Below, piece by piece: positions 1 through 20,477 of a stretch of DNA of 49,641 nt. Origin of the DNA: Octopus bimaculoides (Eukaryota); the NCBI RefSeq assembly GCF_001194135.2, contig NC_069001.1, positions 19,452,228-19,501,868 on the forward strand, read 5' to 3'. A program made the position numbers and the translations under genes. The stretch's first letter is position 1. Every line of letters starts with the position of its first letter. The notes beneath the pieces are model-generated. The model was not told the origin of the DNA. It searched no databases and saw only the letters and a program-made list of their open reading frames with translations.

Positions 1-104
1 GATTATTTTTTCTAAATAGAAGTAAATTCCAAAGTAAACGTTTCTAGTAGAGAAGTAGAAGAGAACAGGAGCAAAAATTGGACTATACACGCAGGGTTAA
101 ATAT

Positions 105-474
105 AGAAACTATCACAGTGTCGCTTCCCGAAGAATTTTAAAATGTTAGCTTTCCGAAACTTTTTTTTTCAATCTTGCAAAAATACGAAGATTAAGAATA
201 AACAGAAAAAGTACACAAATATATTTTACATAGTTGTCGTATACGTCGGTTTTGTTTTCACATAAGATCAATGAAGAACACAAACACGTACTGAAACAGT
301 GACTAAACTTATGTTATTATAAACAAAACAGACGTATACGACAACTATGTAAAATATATTTGTGTACTTTTTTCTGTTTATTCTTCATCTTCGTGTTTTT
401 GTAAGATTGAAAAAAAAAATTTCGGAAAGCTAACATTTTAAAATTCGTCGGGAAGCGACACTGTGTTAGTTTCT
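105..474. repeat. Long inverted repeat (arms ~105-257 and ~321-474), MITE/foldback-like
   Basis: Arms are reverse complements with scattered mismatches, e.g. TCGCTTCCCGAAGAATTTTAAAATGTTAGC vs GCTAACATTTTAAAATTCGTCGGGAAGCGA. Confidence 0.85.
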
Positions 475-617
475 GCATAGAAAATTTCATTAAAACATAT
501 TCATTTTTCTGAAAGTTATGACCTCCCAAAGTCTGGGGGGTAAAACCCTGTAGCTATGCCGCATGTATGATACATAAGCTCAATCAGAACAGAGCAGGCA
601 TTCCTACACATGTGCGC

Positions 618-1290
618 CCCACCCCAACTTTGTTGCCTCCTAACTTCTAGAAAAATGGATACATTTTAACGAATTTTTCTACAAATATGCTTCAAATGGT
701 ATAGATTCTGATATATTGAAATATGTGCTGAAATTCTTTTTCAGAGAGTGGAGTAAGTATTTTCGGAAATTCACACGAGCCGGCTTTGTTTACTCATAAC
801 TTTCCGAAAAATGGGTACTTTTTAATGAAATTTTCTATAAATAACTTTCACAGTATGTAGGCCACGATTATATTGGAATTTAATTTGGAAAAAAAAAAAT
901 GGTGGTCCTGCGTGCATACATAGACACACATCACATACACCTAGAAAATACAATGAAGGTTCATTATACATCAGTATGAATGTGTGTGTGCTCAATTATT
1001 TTTCTTTCTGCACTAATTTCCGATATAATTTGTAATTTACACACTCTGGAAGGTATTTGTAGAAAATTTCATTGAAAAATACCCATTTTTCTTAAAGTTA
1101 TGAGGAAACAAAGCCAACTTGTGTGAATTTTCCGAAACTCCTCTTTTCACCCCAAGAAAAACATTTTTCACAACAAATTCCGATGTAATCGGAATCTACA
1201 CCATCTGAGGCGTATTTGTAGAAAATTTCACTAAAAAAAATAACCATTTTTCTGGAAGCTACTAAGAGACAAAGTCAGGTGGGGATGCCC
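618..1290. repeat. Degenerate ~670-bp palindromic foldback-type element built from an AGAAAATTTCA...CATTTTTCT..AAGTT module
   Basis: Module reversed at ~646-680 and ~805-845 and forward at ~1055-1100 and ~1213-1265, symmetric about ~950. A further forward copy is at ~478-520. Confidence 0.65.
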
Positions 1291-1321
1291 AACAATTAAC
1301 TAATTATATAAATACACTAAC

Positions 1322-1652
1322 CTTTACGTCGTTGGCCCTTAAATAGAGATTTATGTAAATAAGGTATTTCATCGGTTATTTCTGCAGAGATATTATTCTG
1401 TTTAATAATTGTTTCACTTGAATTATTGCATAAGAAGTCATCAATGTTGGGTCCATGCACGAGTTTTTCTCTGAAAGTTTCTAAGTTACTTTTGCGAGGT
1501 GATGAGCTTTCGTTAGGTTTAACTGAAGACACACATCGTCTGTAGGGTGGTAATTTTCTATAATGGGAGCTTAAATGTGGTTGGGATTTTCGTCGAAGAC
1601 AAGTGATGAAGGTATAATTTGTTGACAACAAACGGTTGAAAGATAACATCAT
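1322..1652 (-). CDS. CDK5RAP1: Probable first coding exon of CDK5RAP1 (mitochondrial presequence plus N-terminal region), on the opposite strand to the 3' exons
   Basis: 110 codons + 1 nt ending AAA G|GTTAGT (phase-1 donor). Residues 1-47 have no D/E and are R/S/L-rich (presequence-like). FREKLVHGPNIDDFL...EIPYLHKSLFKGQRRK(V) matches my recall of human FSSRLAAGPTFQHFL...PPPYLMMDELLGRQRKVYLETYGC. Confidence 0.8.
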
Positions 1653-2019
1653 TTAAATAGAGCTGACGAAGGACAAGACTAGAGGAGACAGCAATACCAG
1701 TCTGAAACGGTGTAAAGCCACATTTTATCGGACTGAAAATAAAGGAGAGAAATAAACCTCAAAGAAACCCATAAGAAAACTAGAATCTAAATAAACTAGT
1801 CATGAATTGGTATCTAAAGAAAAAAATAAATAAAACACTTTCCATTCAAAACACTTCAGCTAGCATTCTAACGTGTGACCAGTTGTAATTGTTCGAAGCT
1901 TATGATGACATTGGTGTCATCTCTGGGATAAAGTTATAATAGCTTGATGGAATTATTGTAATCTTTAAAATAAAGTTATATTCACTTTCACTTCATTATT
2001 ATTTTAAAGATAAGCATGA

Positions 2020-2162
2020 TGGCAGAATCGCTAGCACACCGAACAATAACAGTTGCCGGCATTTCGTCCCTCTTTACGTTCTGGGTTCAGATTCCACTGG
2101 GACGGACTTCGCCTTTCATTCTTTCGGTTCGATAAAATGAACATAGTCAATATAATCGACTT
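2020..2162 (+). mobile_element. tRNA-derived octopus-type SINE (OK/OR-like), decayed
   Basis: TGGCAGAATCGCTAGC A-box-like and GGTTCAGATTCC B-box-like, followed by TTCGCCTTTCATTCTTTCGG. Confidence 0.65.
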
Positions 2163-3081
2163 TCTCTACTATATTATTAAATATCAAAGTCTTTAGTCAT
2201 ATATGTCTACGACTTGGTTACAGTCACACTGTTACTATATCATAGAATATCACTATTTCTTTTTTTAATTTTTACCCCCCAGCCATAGCTCCCGAAATTT
2301 CCACTCATTCGAATTTTAAACCAGAATTTAAAATACGGACAGTCCGAATTTTTTATACATTTATTTTTTAATACATTAATACATCCACAACTTGATCCCT
2401 GATACTCAGCTTTGTTGTAGACTATCATCAACAATAACTTCAAGATATCAACGTTATAAAAAAGAAAAAATATTCTCTATGTAAAATAAATTTCAAAAAC
2501 CGGCATCAAAATCTCACCCTCTCCATGGTCATGCTTTCAAATTGAAAGCAGGTTTAAGTTTACTTTAAAACATTTTGTGAGTGTAAGAAATTGGTTTGCC
2601 ATGAAGAGAAGGAATAAGTATCAACTTCTGAAGATGGACATTTCGTCATATTTCTCTCCAATGAAAAGATCTTCCCGAAACATCAGACTTTTCCCTTTCA
2701 TCACGGCAAACATTACTATTTTGTTTTCTTTTTCGGAGCCTCGTCTCTGCAATCTTAAAGGAGAGAACGGTAATAATTTTCACCGTTTTATAAAACGGTG
2801 GGCAACGTGGGCTCCAGTTTTCAACCAAGGAATTAAATTTAATTCCACAAAACTATTTGTAGAGGTTATAACCTGCCACAGTTCTGTTGTGTGTGTGTCT
2901 GAAGTCGTTATTAAAAATATATCTAGCTCTGTAAGACGTACACCTTAGTTCAAGTTGAAAGTATTGTGTAAGCCACAATCTCGCTATTTGACATTTGTCA
3001 GTTGTCAATTTCATGAAAATCTGTAGTTTATTATTTGGTAGCCTATTTAAAATTAGTAGAGTCCTGAAACCAGTAAACAAG

Positions 3082-3115
3082 ATGGCAAAAATCATACAAC
3101 TGGATGCTACAGAAG
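3082..3115 (+). CDS. Possible short first coding exon of an unidentified gene, divergent from the CDK5RAP1 5' exon
   Basis: aagATGG start context; MAKIIQLDATE+G|GTAAGT donor, then a pyrimidine-rich start of intron running into the gap. Product not recognised. Confidence 0.35.
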
Positions 3116-3143
3116 GTAAGTTATCTTTTATTTTTCTTGAGCG

Positions 3144-3243
3144 NNNNNNNNNNNNNNNNNNNNNNNNNNNNNNNNNNNNNNNNNNNNNNNNNNNNNNNNN
3201 NNNNNNNNNNNNNNNNNNNNNNNNNNNNNNNNNNNNNNNNNNN
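3144..3243. other. Assembly gap of exactly 100 N
   Basis: Counted. The other gaps are 337, 235, 147, 10, 636 and 10 N; 100 N is the usual placeholder for a join of unknown size. Confidence 0.9.
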
Positions 3244-3689
3244 CCACATTTCTAATGAAGTTCACTGATTTGCAATGTGTTGTCCTGTAGTTTATGTATT
3301 TACAAAACATTGACGAACATGAGTTATATTGTAGTGAATGCTTATGTGTACATGCGTTTGAGAGAGCGAGGAGGGGGAGAATGGAAGACAGTTATAAAAT
3401 AGCAATGTGTACGCATGTTTATATAAGAACACACACAAACTAAATCTTATATCTATAATGTTGATGTGTTTATGTGTATGTTGTTGTCACAGATCACATA
3501 TGTGTGGTTGTGTGTGTTTTTACGTTTCTATGTTATGAAAAATATGTTAGAGGTAGAGGGATAGAAGAAAGCTATTAAATGGGAGAGAGAGAAAGAAGAA
3601 CGAAGTAAGAGTGAAAAGGTAGATAAGAAGGAAAGAATAGAAAGGGAAGAATAGTCTTAAAGCAAGTTAATCTATGACTTTGTATGTAT

Positions 3690-5960
3690 GACTTTCTCTC
3701 TCTCACTGGCTCTCTGTGTGGCTGAGGGCATGTTTGAGAGGGCCATTATGAATAGTAGTGGTCCCAAAACAGTGCCTTGCGGAACACCGCTCACTATTTG
3801 CGTGTCATTGGAGGTGGCCCCATTGGCTACTACCACCTGACTTCTATCCTTCAGAAAGTCATGAAGCCATTCTCCCAATTTTCTAACTATGCCGAGATCA
3901 TGCAGTTTGTGACATATCATTCCATGATCGACTTTATCAAAGGCCTTTGCAAAGTTGAGATATATCACTTCCACATTTGAGTGGTTAAGTAGCTGTTTTA
4001 GCACCCAGTCATAGTGTTGTAAGAACTGAGTCAGGCAGCTTCTTCCTGGTCGGAAACCATGTTGGGTGTCAGGCAGCAAGTCATTTTCTTTANNNNNNNN
4101 NNNNNNNNNNNNNNNNNNNNNNNNNNNNNNNNNNNNNNNNNNNNNNNNNNNNNNNNNNNNNNNNNNNNNNNNNNNNNNNNNNNNNNNNNNNNNNNNNNNN
4201 NNNNNNNNNNNNNNNNNNNNNNNNNNNNNNNNNNNNNNNNNNNNNNNNNNNNNNNNNNNNNNNNNNNNNNNNNNNNNNNNNNNNNNNNNNNNNNNNNNNN
4301 NNNNNNNNNNNNNNNNNNNNNNNNNNNNNNNNNNNNNNNNNNNNNNNNNNNNNNNNNNNNNNNNNNNNNNNNNNNNNNNNNNNNNNNNNNNNNNNNNNNN
4401 NNNNNNNNNNNNNNNNNNNNNNNNNNNNNGGAATCCATCAGGGCCAGTAGCTGAGTTTGGGTTCATTTCATCTGTAGCCCTTATTACATCGTCTTCCTTT
4501 ATATCGATGTAATCAATCATCATTGCCTCTGCTTTTATATCTGCAGTGGTAAAAAAGTCAGTTGGATTGCTGACTTGAAAGTACCCTAGGGGTGGAGTGA
4601 AAACACTTTTGAATTGCTCATTTAGTATTTCACTTATCCTCATTGGGTTTCCTGTGAGTGAACCATCTTTTTCGAGGAGTGGCCCTATCCTCCAATGCGC
4701 TGCAGCTGTTTCTTTGACAAACTTGTAGAAGGCTCTGGGGTTAGATTTTATATTGTCTATAGCCCTGGCTTCTTTGTTTGCTCATGGAAGAGTTGCAGAT
4801 TTTTTTCTATCTCCAGCAGTTGTATTTTCAGGCAAGATTTTTCACTGCTTTCAATTTGTTTGTTTAGGTGATTTGAAATTTTTGTACGCCAGCTCATAAG
4901 AATTTTCCTCTCCCTGGAGATTTTGTTCTGTACTGTGGCTTTTCTCTCTCTTACATTACAGACATGAATTGTTGAAGTTTCATGTCGATGTCCAGGGAGG
5001 AGAGATATTTAGGCCAGTTTTGTTTGAGGATCTTTCTCAATTTGTTTCCAGTTTTCTATGGAAGTTCAAGCTGGAAAGATTTTGAGAGTTTCTTATAGCT
5101 GGTCCCTCTGTACATGGTTTCCTTTGGTCCGTATATGGTCAGCTCTACCATGTTGTGATCCGAGAGTAGCATCGGTGTCACTTTCACATTATGGATGAGA
5201 TCCATATTATTTGTGAAGCAGAGATCCAGTATATTACCTGCCCTAGTTGGTTGGAGGACTATTTGTTCCATGTACAAAGTGTTGGCAAGGTTCAGGAGGA
5301 AATTCACCTGTCCTTATTTGTATCGTGTCATTCCTGGAAGAGAAAGGCCCTCGGGCCATCTGACATTGGGCAGATTGAAGTCTCCCATAAGAAGTACACT
5401 TATGTGTTGTTCTAATGTGACTAGAACTTCTTCTATTTTTGTAAGGCAGTCTTCAAACTTGCCTACATGATTTGGAGCATCTGGAGGGCGATATGTAGCA
5501 CATATAACTACATTGAGTTGTCTTATATGTACAATTAGTGCGTCACGTACTGAATTTGAGTGTGACAAAAGGACCTGGGGTGTGAGGTCTTCGCGGATGT
5601 ACATAGCAACTCCACCATGACTCCTTTCTTTCCTGTCGGTCCGTAATACAACATACTGTGGTATGTGTATTTCTGCATTTCCTATATCTGGTTTCAGGTG
5701 TGTTTCCATAGGTGCTATGCATAAGGCTTGATTGCAAGCAACAAGGTCTTTCAAGAAAGGGATTTTTGTCCTGTTACTAAGTGATAACAGTCCTCTGATG
5801 TTCAGTAAGAGCACCAATGTGATGTGTGTGTTGTTGCCAGTAGTGCCTAGTGCCCACCTTGGGTCTATTTGCTGTAGTAGTCTTGTGTATTGGGGATAGT
5901 CTCAACTGTGAGATTGTAGCCAGGTCAGCTGCTGTACCATCTTTTGTGCCATGCACAAAA
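3690..5960 (-). mobile_element. CR1/Jockey-group LINE, decayed; 3' end missing within the RT
   Basis: APE endonuclease (LLNIRGL...ETHL...DRKERSHGGVAMYI...GDFNLP) and RT (QHGFRPGRSCL...FAKAFDKVDH...GVPQGTVLGP), with frameshifts and a 337-N gap. Confidence 0.9.
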
Positions 5961-6541
5961 AAGATATATATATATATATATATATATATGCATATATCCA
6001 TACATATATGTACATACGTACATCTATATGTATACATACATGCATATATGGGTACAGGACATCAAAAAAACGTTAAACACAATGAGGAACGAAAACAGAA
6101 AATGAACTTTTTTTTGAACAATGGAAAAAAACAAAGAGCGAAATGAGACATGCAATATAAAGAGTATATCCCTTCGTCAGTTGTCCCTGTCCATCTACTC
6201 TGCGTTTCGAATGCAAGGACAATACGCGACTTCGTTGGAACAGTCCTTCCCGCAAAGCAAATTAAATAAAATTTGGAATTTTTTGCGAAGGATGAAAGTG
6301 TTAACAAGAACAGGACAATGAGAACAAGACAGTAAAAACAAACGGTGAGGGCTGCTGGGCCAAGACGATAGAAAAATTATTATGAACGCTAAGTAGAGAG
6401 AGTTAGTGAATCCAACCCAGTAAGGGATAATATCTATCCAATATACTGCTGAGAGGGTACCCAATTATTATTACACTAGTGATTTTTCCAAGTGCAACAA
6501 GTGGGTGCTGGTAAAAGGAGGTTTTACCCTAAATTTATATG

Positions 6542-6771
6542 GCAATAAGAAAATGGAGGGGAATATGTGGTACTCATCAACTTGCAGACACTGTACTATG
6601 TTAATTAACCTATTTATTTTAATTTTTAATTGTTGATATGACAGAGTGTGTCATATATGTTTGTATATTGTCTTTATTGTCCTTTTGGTTGAAAAATAAA
6701 TAGGTTAATTAACATAGTACAGTGTCTGCAAGTTGATGAGTACCACATATTCCCCTCCATTTTCTTATTGC
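6542..6771. repeat. Perfect 79-bp inverted repeat with a 72-bp spacer, abutting a (TA)n tract
   Basis: 6542-6620 is the exact reverse complement of 6693-6771. Confidence 0.95.
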
Positions 6772-6803
<32 letters not shown>

Positions 6804-7981
6804 TATATATACAAACAACGGCATTAATTTTATTCAGCTGCATACTGTTATTAATTTTATTCAGCTGCAACCGTCATTGATTGGTTGAAATTACCGAAAT
6901 ACGACAACTTTAACACAAAATAACTTTGAAAATATAAACTTTTCTCAACAACATTAAGATAAAAGATGTTTTATACGACATATTCTAGCAGTGTGCGAAG
7001 TTTGAAAGTGTTTAGTTACAAAAAATTAATTTCTTGATCTGTTATTTAAAGGGGAAATATCCCCCGTCACCATTATACATAAGTCCTGACTCCAGCTATA
7101 TGAACGCCAGAGTGAGAAATATATACTCTGAAATGCTAACAGACATTTTATGCATGCATGTATGTTGAAGATAAACAAATTTGTGTTCTTTTAACCGCTA
7201 TAAAAAAATACACAGTTTCATAATTGCAGAAATAAATTTCATTAACAAACTGAAGAACATGAAGAAAGAGAAAATAATTACTACATTATTTTATTTATGT
7301 ACATTTAGCATTTATAGTACAATTGGAAAGTAAAATCATTTTGTCATAGAGAATTACTACTTAAAATTCACACTAGCTAATCTTTCATACTAACTACTAG
7401 AGCTCACAACAATTTAAATAAGTCTTGTTGGATTTTTATCATAGACATGGCATAAAAAATAGCCAATATCTCAATGGGTGAGTGTCGTGGAGTTTAGTAA
7501 CATCCTACGAACACTGATTAATTTCCCCAAAATCAGGGTTTCTGTAACTGCTCATACCTGAATTCTAAGAACCGTATTTCGTGAAAGATTTCTCTGACAA
7601 AAGTTTAGAATTCAAATATGGGCAGTAATTTTAACCAATGGGATACCAACAATTATGCTTGTTCAGGCAAACAACCATTACATCATATTGCCACCTTTTA
7701 TGACTTGCTACACTGCTTTATTCTCTCTTACATTGACCTTACTTTTTTCCCTCAATTTCCTTTTCTCTGTCCTCTTGCTCTCTCTCCTTTACCTTTTCTC
7801 TCTAACGTTGTATTTGTTTCTTTTACGCACCTTTCCTCTTCCTTATAACTATTTCTCAGTTTCTCTCCCTCATTTTCCCCTTCTTCTTATTTTGTATTAC
7901 TCTTTCTTTCTTCCTAACACTGTCTGTTCTTTCTCTCTCTCTGTTGTCTATCAAACTTTCACTGATTTTCTGTAATTCCAG

Positions 7982-8112
7982 AAATAAGTCTATCCAGTGA
8001 TTTCATAACTGGTTTCTGTGGTGAGACAGAGGCAGCTCATCATGACACTGTCTCCTTGATGAAAGAGGTCTGCTACAACTTTGCCTTCACTTTCCCATAC
8101 AGTATGAGGCAG
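7982..8112 (+). CDS. CDK5RAP1: CDK5RAP1 internal exon (end of radical-SAM domain)
   Basis: ttccag|AA ATA AGT...ATG AGG CAG|gtgagc. Translates [43 protein letters not shown], carrying the MiaB-family SDFIxGFxGETxxxH and YSMR motifs. Confidence 0.95.
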
Positions 8113-8189
8113 GTGAGCTGAAAGGGAACATATCTTTACTTTTATTTTCATAGATTCTTGTTGAATACAGTGGAGTAGCAGGGACAGTA

Positions 8190-8390
8190 GTGTGTCAGAA
8201 GACTGCCTTGTGGTACTTGCTTATGATGTCTCTTTACGTTTCAAGTTTAACTTTGCCTTTCATCCTTTTGTGATCAATGAAATAAAGTGCCAGTCAAGTA
8301 GTGTGTATGGGGGAGGGTTAATTGATTTGCCCACTCTCCTCAAAATTGCTGGCCTTGTACCAGAATTAGAAAGTATTATTATTATTGTGA
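8190..8390 (+). mobile_element. SINE remnant, same family as 2020-2162
   Basis: CTTTGCCTTTCATCCTTT...AAATTGCTGGCCTTGTACCAGAATTAGAAAGT(ATT)n tail. Confidence 0.6.
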
Positions 8391-8699
8391 TACAAGGGAT
8401 AAACTGAAAGAATGAGTAGAGCCTTCTGTATTTTGTTGGACTCTTTACATTCTGAGTTCCAATTCCTTGATAATCAACTTTAATTTTGATCATTTGGAAG
8501 TTGATACAATAAGTTTCAACTAAAGGTTCGTGTTGACATAAATAACTGTTCCTCTCCATCAAATTTCTGTCTTAATGCTTAATGTTGAAAACAATTATCA
8601 TCATCATCATAGCATATCTCTCTAATCTGACACTCCTATTTAACATGTCTTGAATCATGTTTTTTGTAATTATTTTCTTTTATTTCTTGAATTAAACAG

Positions 8700-8849
8700 A
8701 AAACCCGTGCTCACCATCGACTCATTGATGATGTTCCCAGTGAGATTAAAGCCAGGAGACAGACTGAACTGGCAGAGACATTTCGCAAAGGAGCTTTAGA
8801 ACTGAACACAGAGCAGATTGGGCAGTTACAAATTGTTCTCATCAGTGGA
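8700..8849 (+). CDS. CDK5RAP1: CDK5RAP1 internal exon
   Basis: aaacag|AAA ACC CGT...AGT GGA|gtaagt. 150 nt, phase 0-0. KTRAHHRLIDDVPSEIKARRQTELAETFRKGALELNTEQIGQLQIVLISG. Confidence 0.95.
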
Positions 8850-9419
8850 GTAAGTTCTTTGATTGCTACACTTAGCAAGATGCAAAGCCAAGTAGTTAGA
8901 TTGTTATTCTTATGATCTTAAGGCCATGTATGCAATTTCTGGGGCTAGTAGTACATTGTGTCCTTGAGCAAGGGACTCCATTTGATGTTTCTCAGCTGAA
9001 AATGAGCTGCATGCATCTGCTGTAGAACAGCCTCAGGAAAAAAAACCTAAAATCTTGAAACTGCAAGATGTCAATAACCCTTAGTGGCTGTGGTATGTTC
9101 AATAATTATGATGCAATGACTAAAATTCTGCTTCTTTCCAAGTTTTCTTTGAGTGAGAATCACATCAGTCAAACTTTACTAGAAGGATTGGAAGTCCCCA
9201 TTATCTTTACTAAATCCTTTTATTGGTTTCAGTTAATGGACTGTGGCCATGCTGGGGCTGTCTTGAAAGGTTTTATCATTTCCCAGTACCTGTTTTATTG
9301 AATACTTAAGTTACACATTTGCTTTACACCAGCAAACAAACACAAAGGTGAACACACTGCATCTGGTTATATGTTACCAGTAGCACTGAAGCAACGTAAC
9401 ACAGACACACATTCATACA

Positions 9420-9700
9420 ATAATTACATTCAATTCTCATTGTGCCTTGTGCCACTTGAGGCGATAGCAAGATCATTCCACCTTCTAACACTGAAAGCAT
9501 CCTTGACAGCTTGTTCCATTGTTAACCCTCTATTTTTAAAATCGTTATTGTTCTCTGCCATGTTTCCTTTGGTCAGCCATGTCTTCTTTTACCTTATGGA
9601 ACCCATTGCAAAGTGATCCTGACAATTGAGTTCAGTTTATAGCGACAAAGTCGACCCAGCCGTTTCCATCTCCTTGTCTCAATAGTTTCTCTTATTGGTT
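9420..9700 (-). mobile_element. 3' fragment of an RTE-type LINE
   Basis: Minus-strand peptide WL...RGLTMEQAVKDAFSVRRWNDLAIASSGTRHNEN resembles RTE C-termini. Confidence 0.45.
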
Positions 9701-10783
9701 TCATGTTAGTCTTAGTGTAGTTGACTATTTGAGATCATATTTGGCCTTCAAATAAATTCAAGAATCAGCAAAGCCAACCAATTATTTGGTATTTTAAACT
9801 CAATATGGAAATCATCCATTCATATAATAATAACAACAATAACATATACTCACACACACATACATGCACATGACAGGCTTCCTACAATTTTACTCACAAG
9901 TCATTGTTTGGTCTAGGTTTATATACCTAAGGTGTATGAAAACACACAATGGACTTCTAAACAGTTTCCCTCTAATATTATTTTAAGGTTGTTGATGGCA
10001 GACTTGGTAGAAACAAACCCAGGCTAAATCCTTATAGTCATACCCTGGGTTTTTTTCAAATACCAAACTCCTACTTTCCTCTCGTCACCCATGATTTTAA
10101 TACAGATTTGACAGTGGCTAGAATGAGATACAAATGGAAGAAGTTCTGGGAACCAAGTGGCATGTTAAATGAGGATGGGAAGGGAAACTGAAAGGAAAGG
10201 CGTGTACTGCATGTGTGAGGGGTGCTATGACTCATGGGTGAGAGACCTGAGTAATGAATGCAAAGCAGCAGAAAAGGCTGAAAAGAACAGAAATAATGGT
10301 TTGGTGGATGAGTGAAGTATTGTCAAGAGGGGAAGATAGATTATGAATTGCAGAGGATGATGGGAATAGGGCCAGTGGATGATTGGAGTATTGCTAAGAA
10401 AAATTATAGAGGACGATAGGAGGAAATAGAGCTGCTGAATGATGTTCGAGAAGAGAAATGGAATGAAATGGCTGGGTCATGTGAGAGGAATGATGAATTT
10501 GTACATGAAAGTACATAGAGGAAGATGAAGACTGAGAAAGATAAAGCTAAAGGTGATTGGGTCAGTTAGGAAGCATGTAGAGGATGGATCAAGACAGATT
10601 GGTGAGGATATAGAGGATAGGGCAAAACAAGCAGAAAACTATCATGAGGCCCACAATGCTGATCCCTGATTCAATCTCAATAGTCTGATTAGTATGGAAA
10701 GATTAAACCCAATGCTGTTCCTCATGGCTATGGCTTCAATTATCCACTGGTAATGTTTACTGAATTCTTTATTTATCACCCAG

Positions 10784-10924
10784 ATGAGTAAGCGGTCTCA
10801 ACTGGATCTTGCTGGCCGGAATGATGGCAACACAAAAGTTATTGTACCACAGACCAAAATACCAATTTCTGATGAAGCAGAGCCAACAAGAACAATAGAA
10901 GTGGGTGACTACATTGTTGTTCGA
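10784..10924 (+). CDS. CDK5RAP1: CDK5RAP1 internal exon (TRAM domain)
   Basis: acccag|ATG AGT AAG CGG...GTT CGA|gtgagt. 141 nt. MSKRSQLDLAGRNDGNTKVIVP...GDYIVVR (SKRS...GRNDGN motif). Confidence 0.95.
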
Positions 10925-11944
10925 GTGAGTAATATTGTTTCCATATCTAATGATTTCTAATGGAGCATGATGGATGAGGGCCGAAAGTTCAAACCCGTGA
11001 CACTAATTATATTGTTGATAAACCCTAGTTCTACCTTGATCAAGCCAAGTATAACTAAAGGTATTCCACTCATGATTATCATGTGTTTTTTCTGATTTAC
11101 TGTATTTGGCTCTGCAGTACTTGATGTACAAATCACATTAACATCTTTTGAAAAGCTGTTAATGTGATTTGAAGGAGGTTTGGCTGGCATTCCTAACACT
11201 GTATAGGGGCTACCTTGTTTATACCTTTTACTTAGGGAGACACATTGCAGAGAACAGTCAGCCTAGCTATAAAACTTGACACAACCAACTAATGGGGATC
11301 CTCTTTCAGACCACATAACCTTCTAAATTTCCATCAAATTACTACCATTTTAACAAGTTTTCATTTAACCTAAATAGCTATGTTTTATGTACTTTTGTTC
11401 ATTGTAACATTCTGGTAAGATTATTATTACAAAATAATATAGTCTATTTTGTTTTAGCAGGTTCTATATGAAAGTAGTTCACCATCTTTCAACTGAGCGT
11501 ATGTTTCTGCCCCCTGCTGAAGGACAAATTCAACAGTGGAGGCAAAGAGATCACACTTGATTTTCTTGTTTAGCCCAGAAATTCATATTTTACTTATGTC
11601 ATGCAGAATTTACCAGCTGCTTACATCACTGTTGTTGGTGTTGAAGATCAATGTAAGAAAAGCAGTAACAATTTTTATTTTCCTTTTTTTCATACTAGCA
11701 TGAGTTAGACAAACATAATTATTGAGGGATTGTTTTACAACCAGATACCCTTCCTGTTACTAACCTTTACCTGTTTTTCAAGTAAGGTTCACTTATTTGT
11801 AGTCATTGAAGGCACAAACCCGATGAATAATTTGTTTGACAAAAGAAATGACATCACTATTTTGTAGCTCAGCAATTTCTGGATACATGCAGTGAAAATA
11901 GACACACACACACAATCATCATCTATTTCTAGATCTACCTGTTC

Positions 11945-14085
11945 TATAGGTCCCCTTCACAGTTAGAGATCAGCACTTCTTTATACAGCTGTCCTCATTT
12001 ATACACATCACATGACCATACCAGCATAGTCGTATCTTTTGCACACCACATCTGATGGCTCTTATGCCCAATTTTTCTCTCAAGATGCTTACACCCAGTG
12101 GAGCATAGTAGATTCATTTCTTTCAAGCCATCACATGTCTACTACAGTCACAGCCCATGTTTGCTGCTGTGTAGCATGGTTGTTCACACTCGACACCATA
12201 CAGTCTGCCTTTCACTCTGAGTGAGTAGCCCTTTGTTGCTAACAAAGGTAGAAGCTTTCTGAACTTTGCCCAACCTAGTCTTATTCTAGCAGCTACCCTC
12301 TCAGAATATCCACTTCCACTGTTAACTTGGTTATCTAGATAACGAAAGCTATCAATTACTTCTAGGTATCCCCCGCTGGCATTTTATAGTGTCTATTTTC
12401 CATATATTTTTAGTGTTTATTGTACCTGTGCATCTGCCACACACAAAAACTATTTTCCCAATTAACCTTCCTCTGCACCTTTTATGTGACCATAGCTTGC
12501 ACCAGGTACACCTTATGAAGCCTCTACCTACACTTATTCTACATTAACTCTAAAGCTCTTTGATCCTAGACCTTGCTTCCACTGTTGAAATTTTTTCTCC
12601 AGTTCTGGTAGTGATTCAGGTATAAGAACAAGGTCATCAGCATAAAGGAGCTCCCAGGGACAACCCAGCTTAAATTTCTCTACTATTTCCTGAAGGACTA
12701 TGATGAACAAGAGAGAGCTGAGGACTGATCCTTGGTGAACTCCTACTTGTACATTGAATTCATTGCTATAATTGTTGCCAACCCTCACCTTACTGCCAGC
12801 ATGGCTTGTACAGCTCTCACCAGCCACTCCTTTAACCTTAGTTTCTGCTATGACCACTAGATAAGGGAGTGAGGGACCCTGTCGAAGGCTTTCTCCATGT
12901 CAACAAAAGCCAAGTACAGAGGTTTATTTCTGGTTAGGTACTTCACCTGCAGCTAACTTACCAGGAATATAATGCTTCTCCCTGGCACAAAACAAAGCTG
13001 TATCTCATCTAGCCTAACTCTCTTCCTAATTAGTTGGGCTATGATTGTCTCTGCAACATTCATCACCTGACCCAACAACTTGATACCTCTGTAATTATTT
13101 CTGGCTAAGGCATCACCTTTGCCTTTGTAGCAATTGACTATTGTGCTGCTATACCAGTCATTGGATATGACTCCTTCGTGTACAACCTGATCAACTATAT
13201 GGGTAATGAAACCATAACCCACACTGCCAGATATTTTAAGCATCTCAGCAGTGACTCCTGATGGGCAAGGGGCTTTCCCTGTCTTCATATCCTTCATGGC
13301 CTTATCTACCAAGCTACTGTTTTATTTGGATTGCTGGTCCCTTTGTTGGATCCATATTAGGCAGACTCTCCTTCTCCCGTGAGTTCTCTACATTCAGCAG
13401 CTTTTCATAGTGGCACTTCCAAGCCTCTTTCTTAGCAGAATCATTAACTGCAAGTGAAACATCATCCATGCAAATGCACTTCTGTGATATTGTTCCAATA
13501 ACATCACAATTTTCCCTGACTCAACTGTCTTGCAAGCAGAAACACTTCAAGCCACTGATCCTCATAGTGCAGAACATTGGCAAACTTCTTCCTTTCTGTT
13601 TCACTCCTGGCTAGGTATACCTGCCTCCTTGCTACTGCCACTTTTCCAGTCTTTCCAGGTCTGCTTCTTTGCTCTAATGACCCTGTTAACTACACTGTTT
13701 CACTACCATGTCACTCTAGGTCTAGTTGGGACTTTGTACCAGCCACAAATTTGGTACTGCCAGACATATCTGTTGAAATCACCAACCACGAAGATATGGT
13801 CACTGCAATTTGTCTTTGAGGTAGCCTGCAGCAGAATGTCATAAAAGTTGTTCTTTTGTTGATGTACCCTATCACATACTCTGACTACCTCAATCACCTT
13901 ATTAACTCATTTCTCTGCTAAAAGTATGCCCATACCTCTTACCCCATCACTGTTGCCTTCCCAAAAGGGATAACACCTATGTCACTTGCCAGTGGGGAAC
14001 CTGGCTGGAGATCCCCTCCACCTAACTTCTTGAATGCAAAACATATCAACACATCTCTGTTGAAGCATCTCAACAATCCCACCTA
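11945..14085 (-). mobile_element. RTE-clade LINE (PHD-insertion family), decayed
   Basis: APE remnant (VVGDFN); RT motifs KAPCPSGV, NYRGIKLL, QGSVLSSLLF, LLYADDLVL; IVFVCGRC; FRYLDNQV. Confidence 0.9.
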
Positions 14086-14569
14086 CATTGACTCTGCCAA
14101 CTCTGAGTGAATGTAAGGGGAGGCAGCATATAACGAGGTGGGGGAGCTGTCGCTTTTGGAATCTGAAAAGGTTTTATAGTCTTAAAAACTATGCTAAGCC
14201 TGGCACGTTAAATAATCGTAAAGAAGTTTTCTTAAAATGTGTTCATTTCAAGCGCTACCTACTGGAAAATTGCGTTTCCCAGTTTGCTATTTAAGCTAAT
14301 AATAGACCTTACCGAAATAGATCCTAGCTTCCATTTATCCAGGGGAGATAACCCGTACTCAACTTTTTCCACTGAGCCATTTAACTTTTTTTGCCCTGTT
14401 GTTTTTCCAGCTCTGCGAAAAGTTAAATTTGATGTGCTGTCCACAAAGCTGTTGCATTCATGGATATGAAACTATTGGTCGCTTGTTTTAATATTTACTG
14501 CTCCTATTCTTTAGAGTGTGCTTCTTTTTCTGGTATATGTTTTATTGATAATATATATCCTCATCATCA

Positions 14570-15435
14570 GAGCTAGAGAAGTTTCAGGTGCAAAAGCAAG
14601 GTCGAGAATCGAAGGACCTTAGAGTTAACCTAGCAAAAATCAGAGTCTTAGTAAGTACGAAGGCGGACAAATCACAAATCCCTTCAGGTAGATGGCCCTG
14701 CTCGATCTGTAGAAAAGGTGTCGGTAGAAACTCCATAAAATGTACTTGGTGTAAGCTATGGCCAAATAAGGGGTGCAGCAGTATCAAAGGAAGGTTTGCT
14801 GGGAAGATAGTTTTTGTGTGTGGAAGATGTGCAGGTGCAATAAATACCAAAAATGTACAGAAAACAGATTCCATCACATGCCAGTAGTTGATAGCTTCCG
14901 TTACCTAGGTGACCAAGTCAGTAGTGGGGGTGGATGCTCCGATAACATAGCTGCTAGAATAAGAATAGGCTGGACAAAGTTCAGAGCTATCTCTACTGGT
15001 AACAAAGGGCCTTTCAGTCAGAGTGAAAGGTTGACTGTATGATGCCTGTGTGCAAACAGCCATGTTACACGGCAGTGAGACAGAAATGAAGCTAGTATGT
15101 GCTACATGTGTGCTTGAGAAGACCCAGCAAGCCAAGTGAGATTGGACAATGCCCATTTAAAAGCACCCTTCAATCGTCAGGCGATATGCCATGCTTGTAA
15201 AGACCTGTTGAACCAAGTGAAATTGTAGTCATGCCTGATGTCAGTGCTGCCTGACTGGTAGCACCTAAGAAGCGCACACTACATTATTGGAGTGGTTGGC
15301 ATTAGAAAGGGCATCCAGCTGTAGAAACCTTGCCAAATCAGATTGGAGCCCGGTGCAGCCTCCTAGCTTACCAGTTCTGTCAAACTGTCCAACCCATACC
15401 AACATGGAATGTGGACATTAAATGATAGTGATCAT
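14570..15435 (+). mobile_element. 3' part of an RTE LINE (PHD-insertion family) with 3'UTR and (GAT)n-like tail
   Basis: RVNLAKIRV...WPCSICRKGVGRNSIKCTWCKLW...FVCGRC...SFRYLGDQVSSGGGC; the UTR ends CCAACCCAT...GGACATTAAATGATAGTGAT. Confidence 0.88.
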
Positions 15436-15710
15436 CATCATCGTTTAATGTCCATCTTTTATGCATGCATGGTTAGGACGGTTGAACTACCCAAGGCTAC
15501 TGTGTCTGTTTAGGCAGAGATTTTACGGCCAGATGCCCTTCCTAACACCAACCACTCTGCAGAGTGGATTAGCATAGCTGAGGTTATTTTTGGTATGATT
15601 TTTATGGCTGGATGCCCTTCCAAATACCAACCACATTACAGTGTGGACTGGATGGTTTTAACATGGCACTAGCACTGGCAGGTAACCAAGTAACTTGCAA
15701 GACAAGGAAT
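15436..15710 (-). mobile_element. RTE 3'UTR-only copy, tail-to-tail with the previous element
   Basis: (CAT)n CGTTTAATGTCC...GATGCCCTTCCTAAC...ACCACTCTGC on +. Confidence 0.75.
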
Positions 15711-16194
15711 TATGAGAGGGACAGGGCATTTGAGGAGGGGAACATATGTCAGAGGATGAAAAGTTAGAGTGTGACAGAAAGACAGAGAGGTAGAAGCTGG
15801 TGTCTTACCACAAAAGAGAGAGCATTAGAGGAGGTGATCCAGTATCAGATGATGAAAGGTTAGAGTGTAACAGTGAAATAGCGAGGCAGAAATAAATGTC
15901 TTGCTATTGAAGAGGTACAAAAAAGGCCAGAAACAAAGTAATACTTAGTTACCTAGTCAGAGGAAAAACAAGAGGAGAGAGCTGGTGTAGTGCTAGGGTA
16001 TACTCACAAGTAACAAGAATGAGTGTAGAACCTGGGTAGAAAAATAGAGTGTGTGGAGCAGCGATACAGTGAGGGCAAGAAAGGGGATTAGAAAACAATC
16101 ATAATTTATGAAGAGGAAATGCAAGGAAGAGAACGATGCAATTAGAAGAGTTGTAGTTTGGGTGAAAAGTGTGTTGTTACATGTGGGTGGGACA

Positions 16195-16700
16195 CAACTC
16201 TTCTAGCACTCAGTTTCATGGACAGGTCTTCTCTAGAAGCTCATATTGCCAAACAGCTCGGTCCACTGTCATTTTAACTCTGTGAACCCACAACATCCTA
16301 AGATCATTCCGCATCACTTTCTCCCTTATCTTCCTGGGTTTCCCTCTTCCACAAGTACCATCCACTTCTGTATAGTTCTCTTCACTCATATGCACCACAT
16401 GTCCAAACCAATGCATTCTCCTCTCCTGCATACTACATCTAATCCTTCTTATGCCTCACTTTTCTCTCAACAGTTATGCTTTGCCGGTCATGCACACTGA
16501 CATTGCAAATCCAACAGAACATACTACTTTCATTCCTCTCCAGCCTACACATATCCTCCGCAGTCAGTGCCCATGTCTCACTACAATGTAACATGGCCTT
16601 TCTCATGCAATCTACCTTTCACTTTGAGAGAGAGTCCTTTTGCTGCCAACAGAGGTGGTAGTACTCTGAACTTCCTCCACCCTATTCTTATTCTAGAATA
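16195..16700 (-). mobile_element. RTE LINE C-terminal fragment
   Basis: RRMHWFGHVVHM...GRGKPRK...NDLRML. Confidence 0.8.
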
Positions 16701-17371
16701 TATATATACATATATATATTACACAAGCAGATCCACTTTGTAGCTTTGGTCAGCTTGTGGCCATATTAGAAGACATCTACAAAGTTGGGGAGTGAGCTTT
16801 TCAACCACATTGCCATGTATGGGCCTAAATACGTATAATTTAAATATCAAAGGTTTAAGTTATAAGTCTATCACTATAAAGTCTAATTTTTTTTCTTCCT
16901 GTAGGTATTGTATTTCTAATAAAAGCACACAATGTATTTGAATTAATTTAAACAATTAATTAGAATAATAATTTCACATATACCTCCCAATTTTCAATTA
17001 TTTCATTAAAAGCATGGCCATGAGAGCATCAACCCTTAAATGGCAGACACCATCAACTGAGGTTTCAAAATTTTTTTAGATGGATACGGCCACCATCAGA
17101 GTAAAGTGAATATTTTACAGCACTTCCCAATGAGAGACTAACAATTACACTCGTACTTATTTAAAATATTAAATAAGTATACAAATTATCCTTAAGAAAA
17201 AGATATTTTGTTTTTTGCGCATTCATACAACCCTTTCCTGTCATTTAAGGAATAACAAGAAATTTTTATGCTGTTATTCATGTAATAAGATTTTGGTGGA
17301 GATTGTAAATTAAATACAAATCCCTTTAAATGAAAGTATTTAATATCAGTTTCCTGTCCTAAAGCATCATA

Positions 17372-18170
17372 ATCGTTACCTTTTAACATCCGCTTTCCAT
17401 GCTGACATGGGTTGGACAGTTTGACTGAGGACTGGCAAGCCAGGAGGCTGCACCAGGCTCCAATCTGTTCTGGCAAGGTTTCTACAGCTGGATGCCCTTG
17501 CTAACGCCAGCCACTCCGAATGTAGTGGGTGCTTTTTATGTGCTACCGACACGGTGGAGGGAGGCTGATGCAGCCAGGTGGCACTGGCAACAACCATACT
17601 TAAATGGCACTTTCAGGCAGCACTGGCATCCCCTGTCTACCTCTTCCACAGGTTCCTTCCACTGTTAAGGTGTGACACTGCACACAGCTGTCCTCATCCA
17701 TACGAAACATGACCATACCAGCACAGTTGTCTCTCTTTCACACTACATCTGATGCTTCTTATGTCCATCTTTTCTTTCAGGGCGCTTACACTCTGTCATA
17801 TATGCACAATGACATTACACACCCAGTGGATGTCAGGCCTATGCATGTCCTCAGCAGTCACAGCCTATGTTTCACTGCCATGTAACATGGCTGTTCGTAC
17901 GCATGCATCATACAGTCTACTTTTCATTAGGCACTTTGTTACCAACAAAGGAAGGAGCTCTCTGAACTTTGCTCAGGCAATTCTTATTCTAGCAGCTATG
18001 CTCTCAGAGCACCCCCCCCTACTGACTTGGTCACCTAGGTAACAGAAGCTATCAACTATTTCTAGTTTTTACTCCTAGCATGTGATGAAATCTGTTTTCT
18101 GTACATTTTTGGTATTTATTGCACCTGCACATCTTCCACACAAAAACCATCTTCCCATTTAACCTTTCTT
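17372..18170 (-). mobile_element. RTE LINE 3' fragment (UTR plus C-terminal ORF)
   Basis: TTTAACATCCGCTTTCCATGC 3' terminus; SFCYLGDQV and FLCGRCA motifs on -. Confidence 0.8.
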
Positions 18171-18589
18171 TGAGCTGGAAGTTGCAACCAAATCTCTCTC
18201 ATGCCAGACCCATCTTTAAAAAAGTATTGCAGTTACAGTGTCTAAGTTAGAAATGGGAGGGTCTTATCTGGAATGCCTTTGGTCATTGTTGAACTGGAGT
18301 TAAATAAGAAATGTATAAAGTTAGATTCAGTCATCTGCCATATTGCATAAGCCATTGTTATGTCTGGAAATGTTGCTGTATGTAGAATTCTGTATTGCAA
18401 AATCCATTTTCTCATTCATTACATTTCACAAAGTGAATGAACATGGAAATCAATGGGAAAATTCATCCAGACAAAATTATTAGGAATGCAATAATACTTT
18501 TGTAATGGGTGTGAATATCTGTAATTTACTAAATTCCTTCCTCTAAAATCTCAATCATATTGAAAATCTATTATTTTCTCTTCCAAAAG

Positions 18590-18679
18590 ATAACCGGTGC
18601 CTCTTCTCAAGTGCTGAAAGGTGAACCTCTCTACCACACAACTTTGGTAAACTTCAGCCGAAAACATACCCTCAAATGA
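18590..18679 (+). CDS. CDK5RAP1: CDK5RAP1 terminal coding exon
   Basis: ttttctcttccaaaag|ATA ACC GGT GCC TCT TCT CAA...AAA TGA. ITGASSQVLKGEPLYHTTLVNFSRKHTLK*, comparable to recalled human ITSASSQTLRG...RTTL. Confidence 0.92.
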   Translation: MTGASSQVLKGEPLYHTTLVNFSRKHTLK

Positions 18680-18906
18680 GTCCAATATTGCTACAGTTAA
18701 TTGGTCGTTTGCTTGAGTAATGGGAGTGAAATCTACATTTCAGCCTCATCAATTTGCAGTCCACTTTCAACTGTCGGTGACTAACATCAGCTGCAACTAT
18801 GAAAATATCCAACTAACAATCAACCTGCAAGAGAACACAACTAAATCTTTCTCAAGTCAACCCTACCATCTTAAAACAAAGCATTAAATTGTATAACTTA
18901 GAATAC

Positions 18907-19072
18907 AATAAAAAGCAGTGAGAAAGATGATACCTGCAAAGCCCAAAGAATGTGAAAGAGTCCTGTACTGCCTCAGATTGGCTTTATTTGGAAGAACTAT
19001 GGCCTAGGATTGAACAACAATGAAAATAATTTATAATATACAAAATAAAGCTAAATAAACATCACATTTATT
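18907..19072. terminator. Candidate polyadenylation signals of the two convergent genes
   Basis: + strand AATAAA at 18907, 19044 and 19054; - strand AATAAA (TTTATT on +) at 18983-18988 and 19067-19072. All lie between the two stop codons. Confidence 0.5.
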
Positions 19073-19081
19073 ATCACAATA

Positions 19082-19345
19082 TCATTTCTTCTTCTGACGC
19101 TTATGTCTTTGTTTATGCTTTTTTTGATGTGTTGGTGGTTTTGGCACATTTTTCGATGCTGCCGTTGTCTGGTTAAGCAAAACACTATGAGCAATAGGTT
19201 TGATAATGGTACCTAGCTTGGTCTCAATTTTCGGTTTAATCAGTTCTTTTACCACAGTTTGAGGATTCCACTCTTTACCAATAGGAGCTGCTATACTCGC
19301 AGCAAAGTCTTTGGCATTGACATAAGGAAATGGTAATTCTTTTAC
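19082..19345 (-). CDS. UTP14: UTP14 terminal coding exon
   Basis: atttcag|GTA AAA GAA TTA CCA TTT CCT TAT...AAG AAA TGA. VKELPFPY...APIGKEWN...PKIETKLGTIIKPI, then a basic tail. Confidence 0.95.
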   Translation of the reverse strand, partial: VKELPFPYVNAKDFAASIAAPIGKEWNPQTVVKELIKPKIETKLGTIIKPIAHSVLLNQTTAASKNVPKPPTHQKKHKQRHKRQKKK

Positions 19346-20377: not shown

Positions 20378-20477
20378 CTGATATTTACGTATAGCAGTGT
20401 CTCTGGTTTCGTCAATGATTACATGTCCAAGAGGATCATCTTTTTGAGGTTCTGTTAGTGGAGCCTTCTTTATAAAT
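20378..20477 (-). CDS. UTP14: UTP14 penultimate coding exon
   Basis: ttttctcag|A TTT ATA AAG...TAT CAG|gtaagt. 100 nt, phase 2-0, completing CA|A of the previous exon. FIKKAPLTEPQKDDPLGHVIIDETRDTAIRKYQ. Confidence 0.93.

What the first reader, a model, noticed from the sequence alone, without database searches (positions are those of the whole stretch)
1322..18679. CDK5RAP1 appears split across strands: 5' exon on minus, 3' exons on plus
Seen: a - strand exon (1652-1322) with a presequence-like N-terminus, CDK5RAP1-like GP..FL / PYL / G..RK(V) motifs and a phase-1 GT donor points out of the window leftwards. The last four exons run rightwards on +. I found no middle exons (YLETYGC, CxxxCxxC) in the sequenced part of 3244-7981. 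Known: animal CDK5RAP1 is normally single-copy and collinear. Inference: the only exactly-100-N gap (3144-3243) lies between the two parts, and flipping the left scaffold would restore a normal gene, so mis-orientation is most likely. A real inversion, an inverted paralogue, or trans-splicing from opposite strands (mod(mdg4)-like) would be exciting but is less likely.
Basis: partly seen in the sequence, partly recalled or inferred. Interest (0 to 1): 0.75.

Follow-up and report, generated by a model that had tools for sequence, protein, structure and literature searches.

The report
Octopus CDK5RAP1 split by scaffold mis-orientation
The octopus CDK5RAP1 gene really does sit on opposite strands either side of a 100-N gap in this assembly, but transcripts show one normal unbroken mRNA, so the split is almost certainly a wrongly oriented scaffold and not biology.

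Summary
The window is Octopus bimaculoides. The first coding exon of CDK5RAP1 lies on the minus strand (CDS 1652-1322, phase-1 GT donor). The last four coding exons lie on the plus strand (7982-8112, 8700-8849, 10784-10924, 18590-18679). The codons between them are nowhere in the 49.6 kb. The only 100-N gap (3144-3243) separates the two parts.

Transcript contigs settle what the gene is. In eight runs exon 1 is spliced to an exon outside the window; where its letters were shown (four runs) it reads GYLETYGCQMN. One contig (run X27) holds the 5'UTR exon, exon 1, 939 nt absent from the window, and exon A. Exon 1 and exon A have opposite orientations relative to the window. A second run (X30) fits the same structure by exact length arithmetic. 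The implied CDS is 1797 nt, in frame, 598 aa.

The published assembly method joined the 2015 shotgun scaffolds with Hi-C (HiRise, Juicebox) without closing gaps. The same supplement names a 100-bp default gap. Short-read DNA contigs stop at the gap, and its right side is high-copy repeat.

The best explanation is a Hi-C orientation error, most simply a flipped left block (confidence about 0.9). I could not test orientation directly. Trans-splicing from opposite strands is not excluded (about 2%).

The parts
2518..2694 (-). CDK5RAP1 non-coding 5'UTR exon. It extends to about 2814 in run X31.
   Evidence: X27 record 1 joins 2518-2694 to 1701, and X31 record 15 joins 2518-2814 to 1732. The minus-strand donor GT is at 2517-2516.
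1702..2517 (-). 5'UTR intron (GT..AG on the minus strand). There is an alternative acceptor giving an exon start at 1732. The intron is retained in one X18 contig.
   Evidence: X18 record 19 runs 1318-2696 unspliced.
1322..1701 (-). CDK5RAP1 first coding exon. The CDS runs 1652-1322 (110 codons plus 1 base) and includes a presequence-like N-terminus. The donor is AAAG|GTTAGT.
   Evidence: In 8 runs the contig leaves the window at this donor; in the 4 runs the next letters were shown and read GYLETYGCQMN.
1..1321 (-). Start of CDK5RAP1 intron 1, which runs out of the window to the left. It is full of nested inverted repeats.
3144..3243 (.). The only 100-N gap in the window. It is inferred to be a Hi-C (HiRise/Juicebox) join between two 2015 shotgun scaffolds. 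No read-level evidence of continuity was found.
   Evidence: gap list; DNA contigs stop 19-98 nt past 3143; repeat to the right; assembly method and 100-bp default gap.
3244..7981 (+). The 3' part of the intron before exon A. It holds an antisense LINE-like element (RT 3672-4092 and 4430-4643, endonuclease 5314-5817), the 337-N gap at 4093-4429, and high-copy simple repeats at about 5890-6840.
7982..8112 (+). CDK5RAP1 exon A (..[22 protein letters not shown]). It enters in phase 1. The preceding exon, outside the window, ends ..YLDLVHHIRHVIP.
8700..8849 (+). CDK5RAP1 exon B (KTRAHHRL..QIVLISG).
10784..10924 (+). CDK5RAP1 exon C (MSKRSQLDLAGRNDGN..GDYIVVR), part of the TRAM domain.
18590..19079 (+). 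CDK5RAP1 last exon. The CDS runs 18590-18679 (ITGASSQVLKGEPLYHTTL..K, stop TGA). The 3'UTR reaches about 19079, with AATAAA motifs at about 19044-19059.
   Evidence: (X13 record 4 ends at 19079).

Best explanation
This is an ordinary single-copy, collinear CDK5RAP1 gene, the mitochondrial tRNA methylthiotransferase of the MiaB family. Its apparent strand split is a scaffolding artefact.

The chromosome-scale O. bimaculoides assembly was made by ordering and orienting the 2015 short-read scaffolds with Hi-C. The 100-N gap at 3144-3243 is one such join. The block to its left carries the divergent neighbour's first exon, the CDK5RAP1 promoter, the 5'UTR exon and exon 1. By inference it also carries the middle 954 nt of coding exons beyond the window's left edge. 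That block was placed next to the correct neighbour but in the wrong orientation.

Reversing the block in place would put exon 1, the middle exons, exon A and exons B-D in one line on one strand.

Shown: the exon positions and strands, the single mRNA, the reading frame, the nature of the gap, and the lack of any bridging contig. Inferred: that the middle exons lie just left of the window on the minus strand, and that the true orientation is the reverse.
For: (1) One mRNA. X27 record 1 (1933 nt) breaks down as 291 nt (exons C+B), 142 nt (7971-8112, laid on '-'), 939 nt not in the window, 384 nt (1318-1701, laid on '+') and 177 nt (2518-2694, '+'). X30 record 7 (1754 nt) equals 382+939+142+150+141 exactly. 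In X32, 563+406-30 = 939.

(2) Frame. 331+954+131+150+141+90 = 1797 nt = 599 codons. That is close to my recollection of human CDK5RAP1 length (about 590-600 aa).

(3) Junction sequences. Exon 1 continues into GYLETYGCQMN. YLDLVHHIRHVIP precedes exon A.

(4) The break coincides with the only 100-N gap. PMC9068888's supplement says the 2015 shotgun assembly was combined with Hi-C using HiRise and Juicebox with no gap closing, and names a 'default gap of 100 bp'.

(5) DNA contigs of 4 runs end 19-98 nt past 3143, and 3244 onward is high-copy repeat. The join therefore rests on Hi-C alone.

(6) The 2015 UniProt model A0A0L8I2G6 starts at an internal Met of exon A, as expected if that scaffold began inside the intron.

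(7) The neighbour gene's exon 1 (to 3115, plus strand) is also left without its next exon. The first 30 nt of that exon are absent from the whole window.

(8) Local orientation errors of short contigs are a documented, frequent Hi-C scaffolding error. 3D-DNA gave 4.3% on short-read contigs, and shorter contigs fared worst (PMC7672694).
Against: There is no direct evidence of the true orientation. The sequence left of the window could not be fetched. The left block's size is unknown, and a large block would be less prone to a flip. The 100-bp default gap is stated in the paper for the squid pipeline and only implied for octopus. Logan contigs are unstranded de Bruijn contigs, so a chimeric contig is conceivable in principle, although three runs agree to the nucleotide.
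Confidence: 0.9

Rival explanations
1. This is a scaffolding error of another kind. The two blocks are wrongly ordered or wrongly joined, for example with the right block misplaced or other small scaffolds missing between them, so a simple in-place flip of the left block would not fully restore the gene. It is still an artefact.
For: Hi-C scaffolders also make order errors among short scaffolds. Nothing here fixes the left block's length or what lies at its far end. The neighbour gene's exon 2 is also missing.
Against: Both halves of one gene being adjacent argues that placement is right and only orientation is wrong. A single flip is the most parsimonious repair.
Confidence: 0.06
2. The assembly is correct, and CDK5RAP1 mRNA is made by trans-splicing two pre-mRNAs transcribed from opposite strands, as in Drosophila mod(mdg4) and lola.
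For: Exon n-1 to exon A is joined in mature RNA while the window holds the two halves on opposite strands. No tool result here proves the orientation is wrong.
Against: The strand switch falls exactly on an unsequenced Hi-C join. No promoter, separate 5' end or alternative 3' modules are seen upstream of exon A. That interval is an antisense LINE fragment and simple repeats. The split would cut a radical-SAM-family enzyme in mid-protein in a gene that, as far as I recall, is collinear in other animals; not tested here. The prior for such trans-splicing is very low.
Confidence: 0.02
3. There is a real inversion, fixed or polymorphic in the reference animal, with a breakpoint in the intron before exon A. 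The intact mRNA seen comes from another allele or from other animals.
For: The orientation in the assembly, taken at face value. The RNA runs come from several studies and animals.
Against: It would destroy a conserved tRNA-modification gene. Intact mRNA structure is seen in every study sampled, including the 2015 runs. The breakpoint would have to coincide with the scaffold ends and the 100-N join.
Confidence: 0.015
4. The minus-strand exon belongs to an inverted partial paralogue or pseudogene of CDK5RAP1 and not to the gene whose 3' end lies on the plus strand.
For: Protein similarity of exon 1 alone is weak (E=0.013; one search found no word hits).
Against: The exon is expressed, has its own 5'UTR exon, and is spliced to YLETYGCQMN. 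It sits in the same contig as exon A with an in-frame 954-nt middle. DNA depth of the left block is flat at the level of its single covering contig in all four runs (8-52x by run), against thousands for the repeat right of the gap.
Confidence: 0.005

Closest known systems
Local orientation (flip) errors of short scaffolds in Hi-C scaffolded assemblies (HiRise, 3D-DNA; described in PMC7672694)
   Same: The strand switch falls exactly at a scaffolder join marked by a fixed-size N gap. The neighbours are placed correctly but one is reversed. A gene is broken across strands, which the paper notes hinders gene prediction. The input was a short-read shotgun assembly (PMC9068888 supplement).
   Different: The true orientation was not observed here. 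The error is inferred from an intact mRNA and the assembly method, not from comparison with a reference.
Vertebrate CDK5RAP1, named mitochondrial tRNA methylthiotransferase in the database hits (from my own knowledge it makes ms2i6A37 and belongs to the MiaB family)
   Same: The domain order matches as far as it can be seen: a presequence-like N-terminus, the GP..FL / PYL / G..RK motifs, then (V/G)YLETYGCQMN. The C-terminal part matches at SLSSDFI.GFCGETE, YSMRQKTRA.HRL, SKRS..DL.GRNDGN and a TRAM domain. The predicted length is 598 aa.
   Different: The radical-SAM core with its CxxxCxxC motif lies outside the window and was not seen as sequence, only as a 954-nt in-frame stretch. The N-terminal 100 aa are poorly conserved.
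Drosophila mod(mdg4) / lola trans-splicing of exons encoded on opposite strands (from my own knowledge)
   Same: As the assembly stands, 5' exons on one strand and 3' exons on the other give one mature mRNA.
   Different: In those loci the arrangement is in contiguous, verified sequence, with many alternative 3' modules that have their own promoters. Here the switch sits on an unsequenced join, there is one 3' module, and no separate promoter is seen.

Membership tests
CDK5RAP1 / MiaB-type methylthiotransferase gene | N-terminal MTTase (UPF0004) domain starting with the conserved YLETYGCQMN cysteine motif | tested here: met
   Transcript letters after exon 1 read GYLETYGCQMN in 4 runs. Eleven of 12 residues are identical to P0036, a bird CDK5RAP1. 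The exon itself lies outside the window.
CDK5RAP1 / MiaB-type methylthiotransferase gene | Radical-SAM core with a CxxxCxxC cluster motif | not testable with these tools
   The 954 nt between exon 1 and exon A are not in the window. Contig sequences cannot be read out beyond 30-nt loose ends. Only their length and frame are known.
CDK5RAP1 / MiaB-type methylthiotransferase gene | C-terminal TRAM domain | tested here: met
   Pfam PF01938 TRAM, E=1.6e-6, 28.3 bits against a cut-off of 21, on the exon A-D peptide. Homologues carry PF04055+PF01938.
CDK5RAP1 / MiaB-type methylthiotransferase gene | Mitochondrial presequence-like N-terminus | tested here: inconclusive
   Composition only: 9 K/R, 10 S/T and no acidic residue in the first 47 aa. 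No targeting predictor was available.
Hi-C scaffold orientation artefact | The strand switch coincides with a scaffolder join (fixed-size N gap) with no sequence-level bridge | tested here: met
   It is the only 100-N gap. DNA contigs stop at it, and the right flank is a repeat. The method and the 100-bp default gap are given in the PMC9068888 supplement.
Hi-C scaffold orientation artefact | The biological molecule (mRNA) is collinear across the break | tested here: met
   X27 record 1 holds exon 1 and exon A in one contig. The X30 and X32 arithmetic agrees, and the ORF is in frame.
Hi-C scaffold orientation artefact | Independent evidence (long reads, a second assembly, a Hi-C map) shows the opposite orientation | not testable with these tools
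   There is no eukaryotic genome collection or long-read run to hand. The look-up of encoding contigs had no record for P0001.
Opposite-strand trans-splicing (mod(mdg4) type) | The genomic arrangement on opposite strands is verified in contiguous sequence | tested here: not met
   The two halves are separated by an unsequenced 100-N join that no contig crosses.
Opposite-strand trans-splicing (mod(mdg4) type) | An independent promoter or 5' end for the 3' module pre-mRNA | tested here: inconclusive
   No distinct transcript start was seen upstream of exon A. There was only a low-depth contig running 7651-8004 across the intron-exon boundary, plus repeats. Unstranded contigs cannot settle this.

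The most novel reading that the evidence does not exclude
The assembly orientation is correct, and octopus CDK5RAP1 mRNA is assembled by trans-splicing a 5' pre-mRNA from the minus strand to a 3' pre-mRNA from the plus strand of the same locus. To my knowledge that would be the first mod(mdg4)-like opposite-strand trans-splicing of a conserved housekeeping enzyme gene in a mollusc.
Probability: 0.02. Interest if true: 0.8.

Novelty: not a real feature. Interest (0 to 1): 0.08.

Why it matters
As biology it does not matter much. The gene is a normal CDK5RAP1 orthologue.

As quality control it is useful in three ways. First, it pinpoints a probable mis-oriented block in the O. bimaculoides chromosome assembly. 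That block breaks CDK5RAP1 and probably also its head-to-head neighbour, whose later exons are likewise missing from the window. Second, it explains why no database model holds exon 1 and why the one octopus model found for this gene (UniProt A0A0L8I2G6, 126 aa) is only a fragment. Third, it shows a cheap general test for such errors: one transcript contig whose pieces lie on opposite strands either side of a 100-N join. If the orientation were real, it would be a striking case of opposite-strand trans-splicing, but the evidence gives that about 2%.

Tried and rejected
- Word-based protein search with the exon-1 peptide found nothing. No database model contains this exon.
- Looking up the 2015 model P0001 to fetch its scaffold failed, as it is not on record.
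- A third protein search with the middle region, meant to find a 2015 octopus 5'-half model, was swamped by vertebrate CDK5RAP1. It only showed that my from-memory human sequence is 99% identical over 97% of the query to a database human isoform.
- DNA contigs across the gap do not bridge it. They stop 19-98 nt past 3143, and the right flank is a repeat.
- A very short stretch (2950-3143) laid nothing, so that call was wasted.
- I searched 19.3-35.6 kb for the neighbour gene's later exons and listed none. Only Utp14 exons were found there.
- The inverted-paralogue idea was rejected because of the single-contig result and the frame arithmetic.
- An apparent exon A start at 7971 (RNA alignments) was rejected in favour of 7982. 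The only AG is at 7980-7981, and the extra 7-11 nt are microhomology with the end of the previous exon.
- An apparent continuation of CDK5RAP1 contigs past 19349 was rejected as a 3'UTR intron. The junctions are CT..AC, so they are minus-strand Utp14 introns, merged because the contigs are unstranded.


Full report
**What the window is.** The concatenated peptide of the four plus-strand exons is identical, over all but the model's last 11 residues, to UniProt A0A0L8I2G6, a 126-aa 'TRAM domain-containing protein' of Octopus bimaculoides. The window holds seven N runs. Only one is exactly 100 N (3144-3243). The others are 337, 235, 147, 10, 636 and 10 N.

**Checking the observation: the minus-strand exon.**
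- An ORF starts at ATG 1652 and runs 110 codons plus one base to 1322. There the sequence reads AAAG|GTTAGT, a good phase-1 donor.
- Its first 47 residues have nine K/R and no D/E.
- Similarity to human CDK5RAP1 is weak but in the right place. Residues 55-101, just before VYLETYGC, match with E=0.013.
- A word-based search found no protein containing this exon.

**Checking the observation: the plus-strand exons.**
- The exons are 7982-8112, 8700-8849, 10784-10924 and 18590-18679 (stop TGA). All have canonical AG/GT sites.
- They match human residues 419-584 and hit Pfam TRAM.
- Nothing matching residues 102-418 exists anywhere in the 49.6 kb on either strand.

**RNA evidence.**
- Logan contigs of eight RNA-type runs from several studies were laid on the window.
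- In four runs the contig that covers exon 1 continues past the donor with the same 30 letters. Read on the minus strand, the mRNA is ...GGCCAACGACGTAAAG|GTTATCTTGAAACCTATGGTTGTCAGATGAATGT, which translates as GQRRK-G-YLETYGCQMN. That is the hallmark start of the MiaB/CDK5RAP1 N-terminal domain, and 11 of 12 residues are identical to a bird CDK5RAP1.
- In four runs the contig holding exon A carries upstream letters that read YLDLVHHIRH, followed by [11 protein letters not shown].
- Neither flanking exon is in the window.

**The single-contig result.**
- X27 record 1 is one 1933-nt contig. It contains 291 nt (exactly exon B plus exon C), then window 7971-8112 laid on the minus strand. Next come 939 nt that lie nowhere in the stretch.
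- It then contains window 1318-1701 and 2518-2694, both laid on the plus strand. In one RNA molecule, therefore, exon 1 and exon A have the same sense, while in the assembly they have opposite senses.
- X30 record 7 (1754 nt) equals 382+939+142+150+141 to the nucleotide.
- In X32 the 563 nt beyond exon 1 and the 406 nt before exon A sum to 939 after a 30-nt (k-1) overlap.
- Four and eleven ambiguous junction letters must be added to the 939 nt, giving a middle of 954 nt. The CDS is then 331+954+131+150+141+90 = 1797 nt = 599 codons, in frame, 598 aa.
- The contigs also reveal a non-coding first exon (2518-2694/2814) and a GT..AG 5'UTR intron on the minus strand.

**The gap.**
- DNA contigs of four genomic runs cover 2500-3143 at single-copy depth and end 19-98 nt beyond 3143. 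From 3244 on, k-mer depth is in the thousands, so this is a high-copy repeat. No contig bridges the gap.
[quoted passage not shown] They state that scaffolding was by HiRise with Juicebox curation.
- The same supplement names a 'default gap of 100 bp'.
- The variable-size gaps in the window are therefore the old mate-pair gaps. The single 100-N gap is a Hi-C join whose orientation rests on contact frequencies alone.
- Local orientation errors of short contigs are a documented weakness of Hi-C scaffolding. 3D-DNA gave a 4.3% local error on short-read contigs, worst for short contigs (PMC7672694).
- The 2015 gene model starts at an internal Met in exon A, as expected if that scaffold lacked the upstream exons.
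- The second gap (4093-4429) lies within one antisense LINE-like element. An RT-domain ORF is on its left flank and an open frame ending ...SATGPDGF on its right, with an endonuclease ORF further on. It sits in an intron and has no bearing on the gene.

**Interpretation.**
- The most likely account is that the left block was placed next to the right block correctly but reversed. That block holds the neighbour's exon 1, the CDK5RAP1 promoter, the 5'UTR exon, exon 1 and, by inference, the middle exons beyond the window's left edge.
- Flipping it in place gives a collinear gene.
- A second clue points the same way. A plus-strand gene lies head-to-head with CDK5RAP1. Its exon 1 ends at 3115|GT with ATG at 3082 and reads MAKIIQLDATE. 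It is spliced to an exon (DLKPQITIAA...) that is absent from the whole window, and no piece of its contigs was listed in 1-35.6 kb. If the flip is right, that exon lies further left on the minus strand.

**Rivals.**
- An inverted paralogue is excluded by the single contig and the frame.
- A gene-breaking inversion is contradicted by intact mRNA in runs from 2015 to 2023, and it would need a breakpoint exactly at the join.
- Opposite-strand trans-splicing, as in mod(mdg4), cannot be formally excluded because I could not see the true orientation. However, the switch sits on unsequenced N, no separate promoter or alternative 3' modules are seen, and the prior is very low. I give it about 2%.
- A more complex mis-join, rather than a simple flip, gets about 6%.

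**Limits.** I could not fetch the sequence left of the window, another cephalopod assembly, or long reads. Contig sequences are visible only as coordinates and 30-nt loose ends. The orientation error is therefore inferred, not observed.

**Verdict.** The strand split is not a real biological feature, and interest is low except as an assembly correction.

Noticed in passing
window 2685-3115 (+), ATG at 3082, donor 3115|GT: This is the first exon of an unidentified plus-strand gene (MAKIIQLDATE, then DLKPQITIAA from the next exon). It lies head-to-head with CDK5RAP1 and overlaps its 5'UTR exon (2518-2814), so the two probably share a bidirectional promoter. Up to about 1220 nt of its downstream exons (X27 record 2, 1532 nt) were not found in the window, so the same 100-N join probably breaks this gene too.
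   Followed up: partly
window 19082-19345, 20374-20477, 24833-25473 (-): These are exons of a Utp14-like gene on the minus strand. The last coding exon hits Pfam Utp14 at E=1.2e-16, and its introns are CT..AC on the plus strand. Its 3'UTR overlaps the CDK5RAP1 3'UTR tail to tail, so unstranded contigs fuse the two genes into one 3311-nt record.
   Followed up: partly
window 7971-7981: The last 7-11 nt of the intron (TGTAATTCCAG) match the end of the preceding exon, apart from one letter near 7971. RNA alignments therefore start at 7971 or 7975 instead of 7982, and the intron end reads in frame as VIP. This may be chance microhomology or a trace of how the intron arose.
   Followed up: partly
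window 3672-5817 (-) and 12534-13312 (-): These are antisense non-LTR retrotransposon fragments inside CDK5RAP1 introns: RVT_1 at 3672-4092, an endonuclease ORF at 5314-5817, and a second RVT_1 fragment at 12534-12857. The 337-N gap at 4093-4429 lies inside the first element. These sequences have genomic k-mer depth in the thousands to tens of thousands.
   Followed up: partly
window 105-474 and 628-1291: Intron 1 holds nested inverted repeats. One near-perfect long palindrome has arms 105-210/369-474 (94% complementary) with an inner pair 206-257/321-372 (98%). Several 40-100-nt units are repeated directly and invertedly (for example 760-859/1038-1137), which looks like a MITE/SINE-type cluster.
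   Followed up: no
window 10925 onward versus 18590-18679: The 2015 UniProt model A0A0L8I2G6 ends ...GDYIVVRVLYESSSPSFN, which disagrees with the RNA-supported junction 10924 to 18590 (...VVR|ITGASSQVLKGEPLYHTTL...). Both its start (an internal Met in exon A) and its last exon are mis-annotated.
   Followed up: yes
window 1701/1732 and 1318-2696 (-): The 5'UTR intron uses two acceptors, giving an exon start at 1701 in X27, X30 and X32 and at 1732 in X31. One X18 contig retains the whole intron.
   Followed up: no
window 5890-6126 and 6601-6837: These simple TA/CA-rich repeats have extreme depth in RNA contigs (10^4-10^5) and many spurious 'joints'. They are not related to the gene.
   Followed up: no
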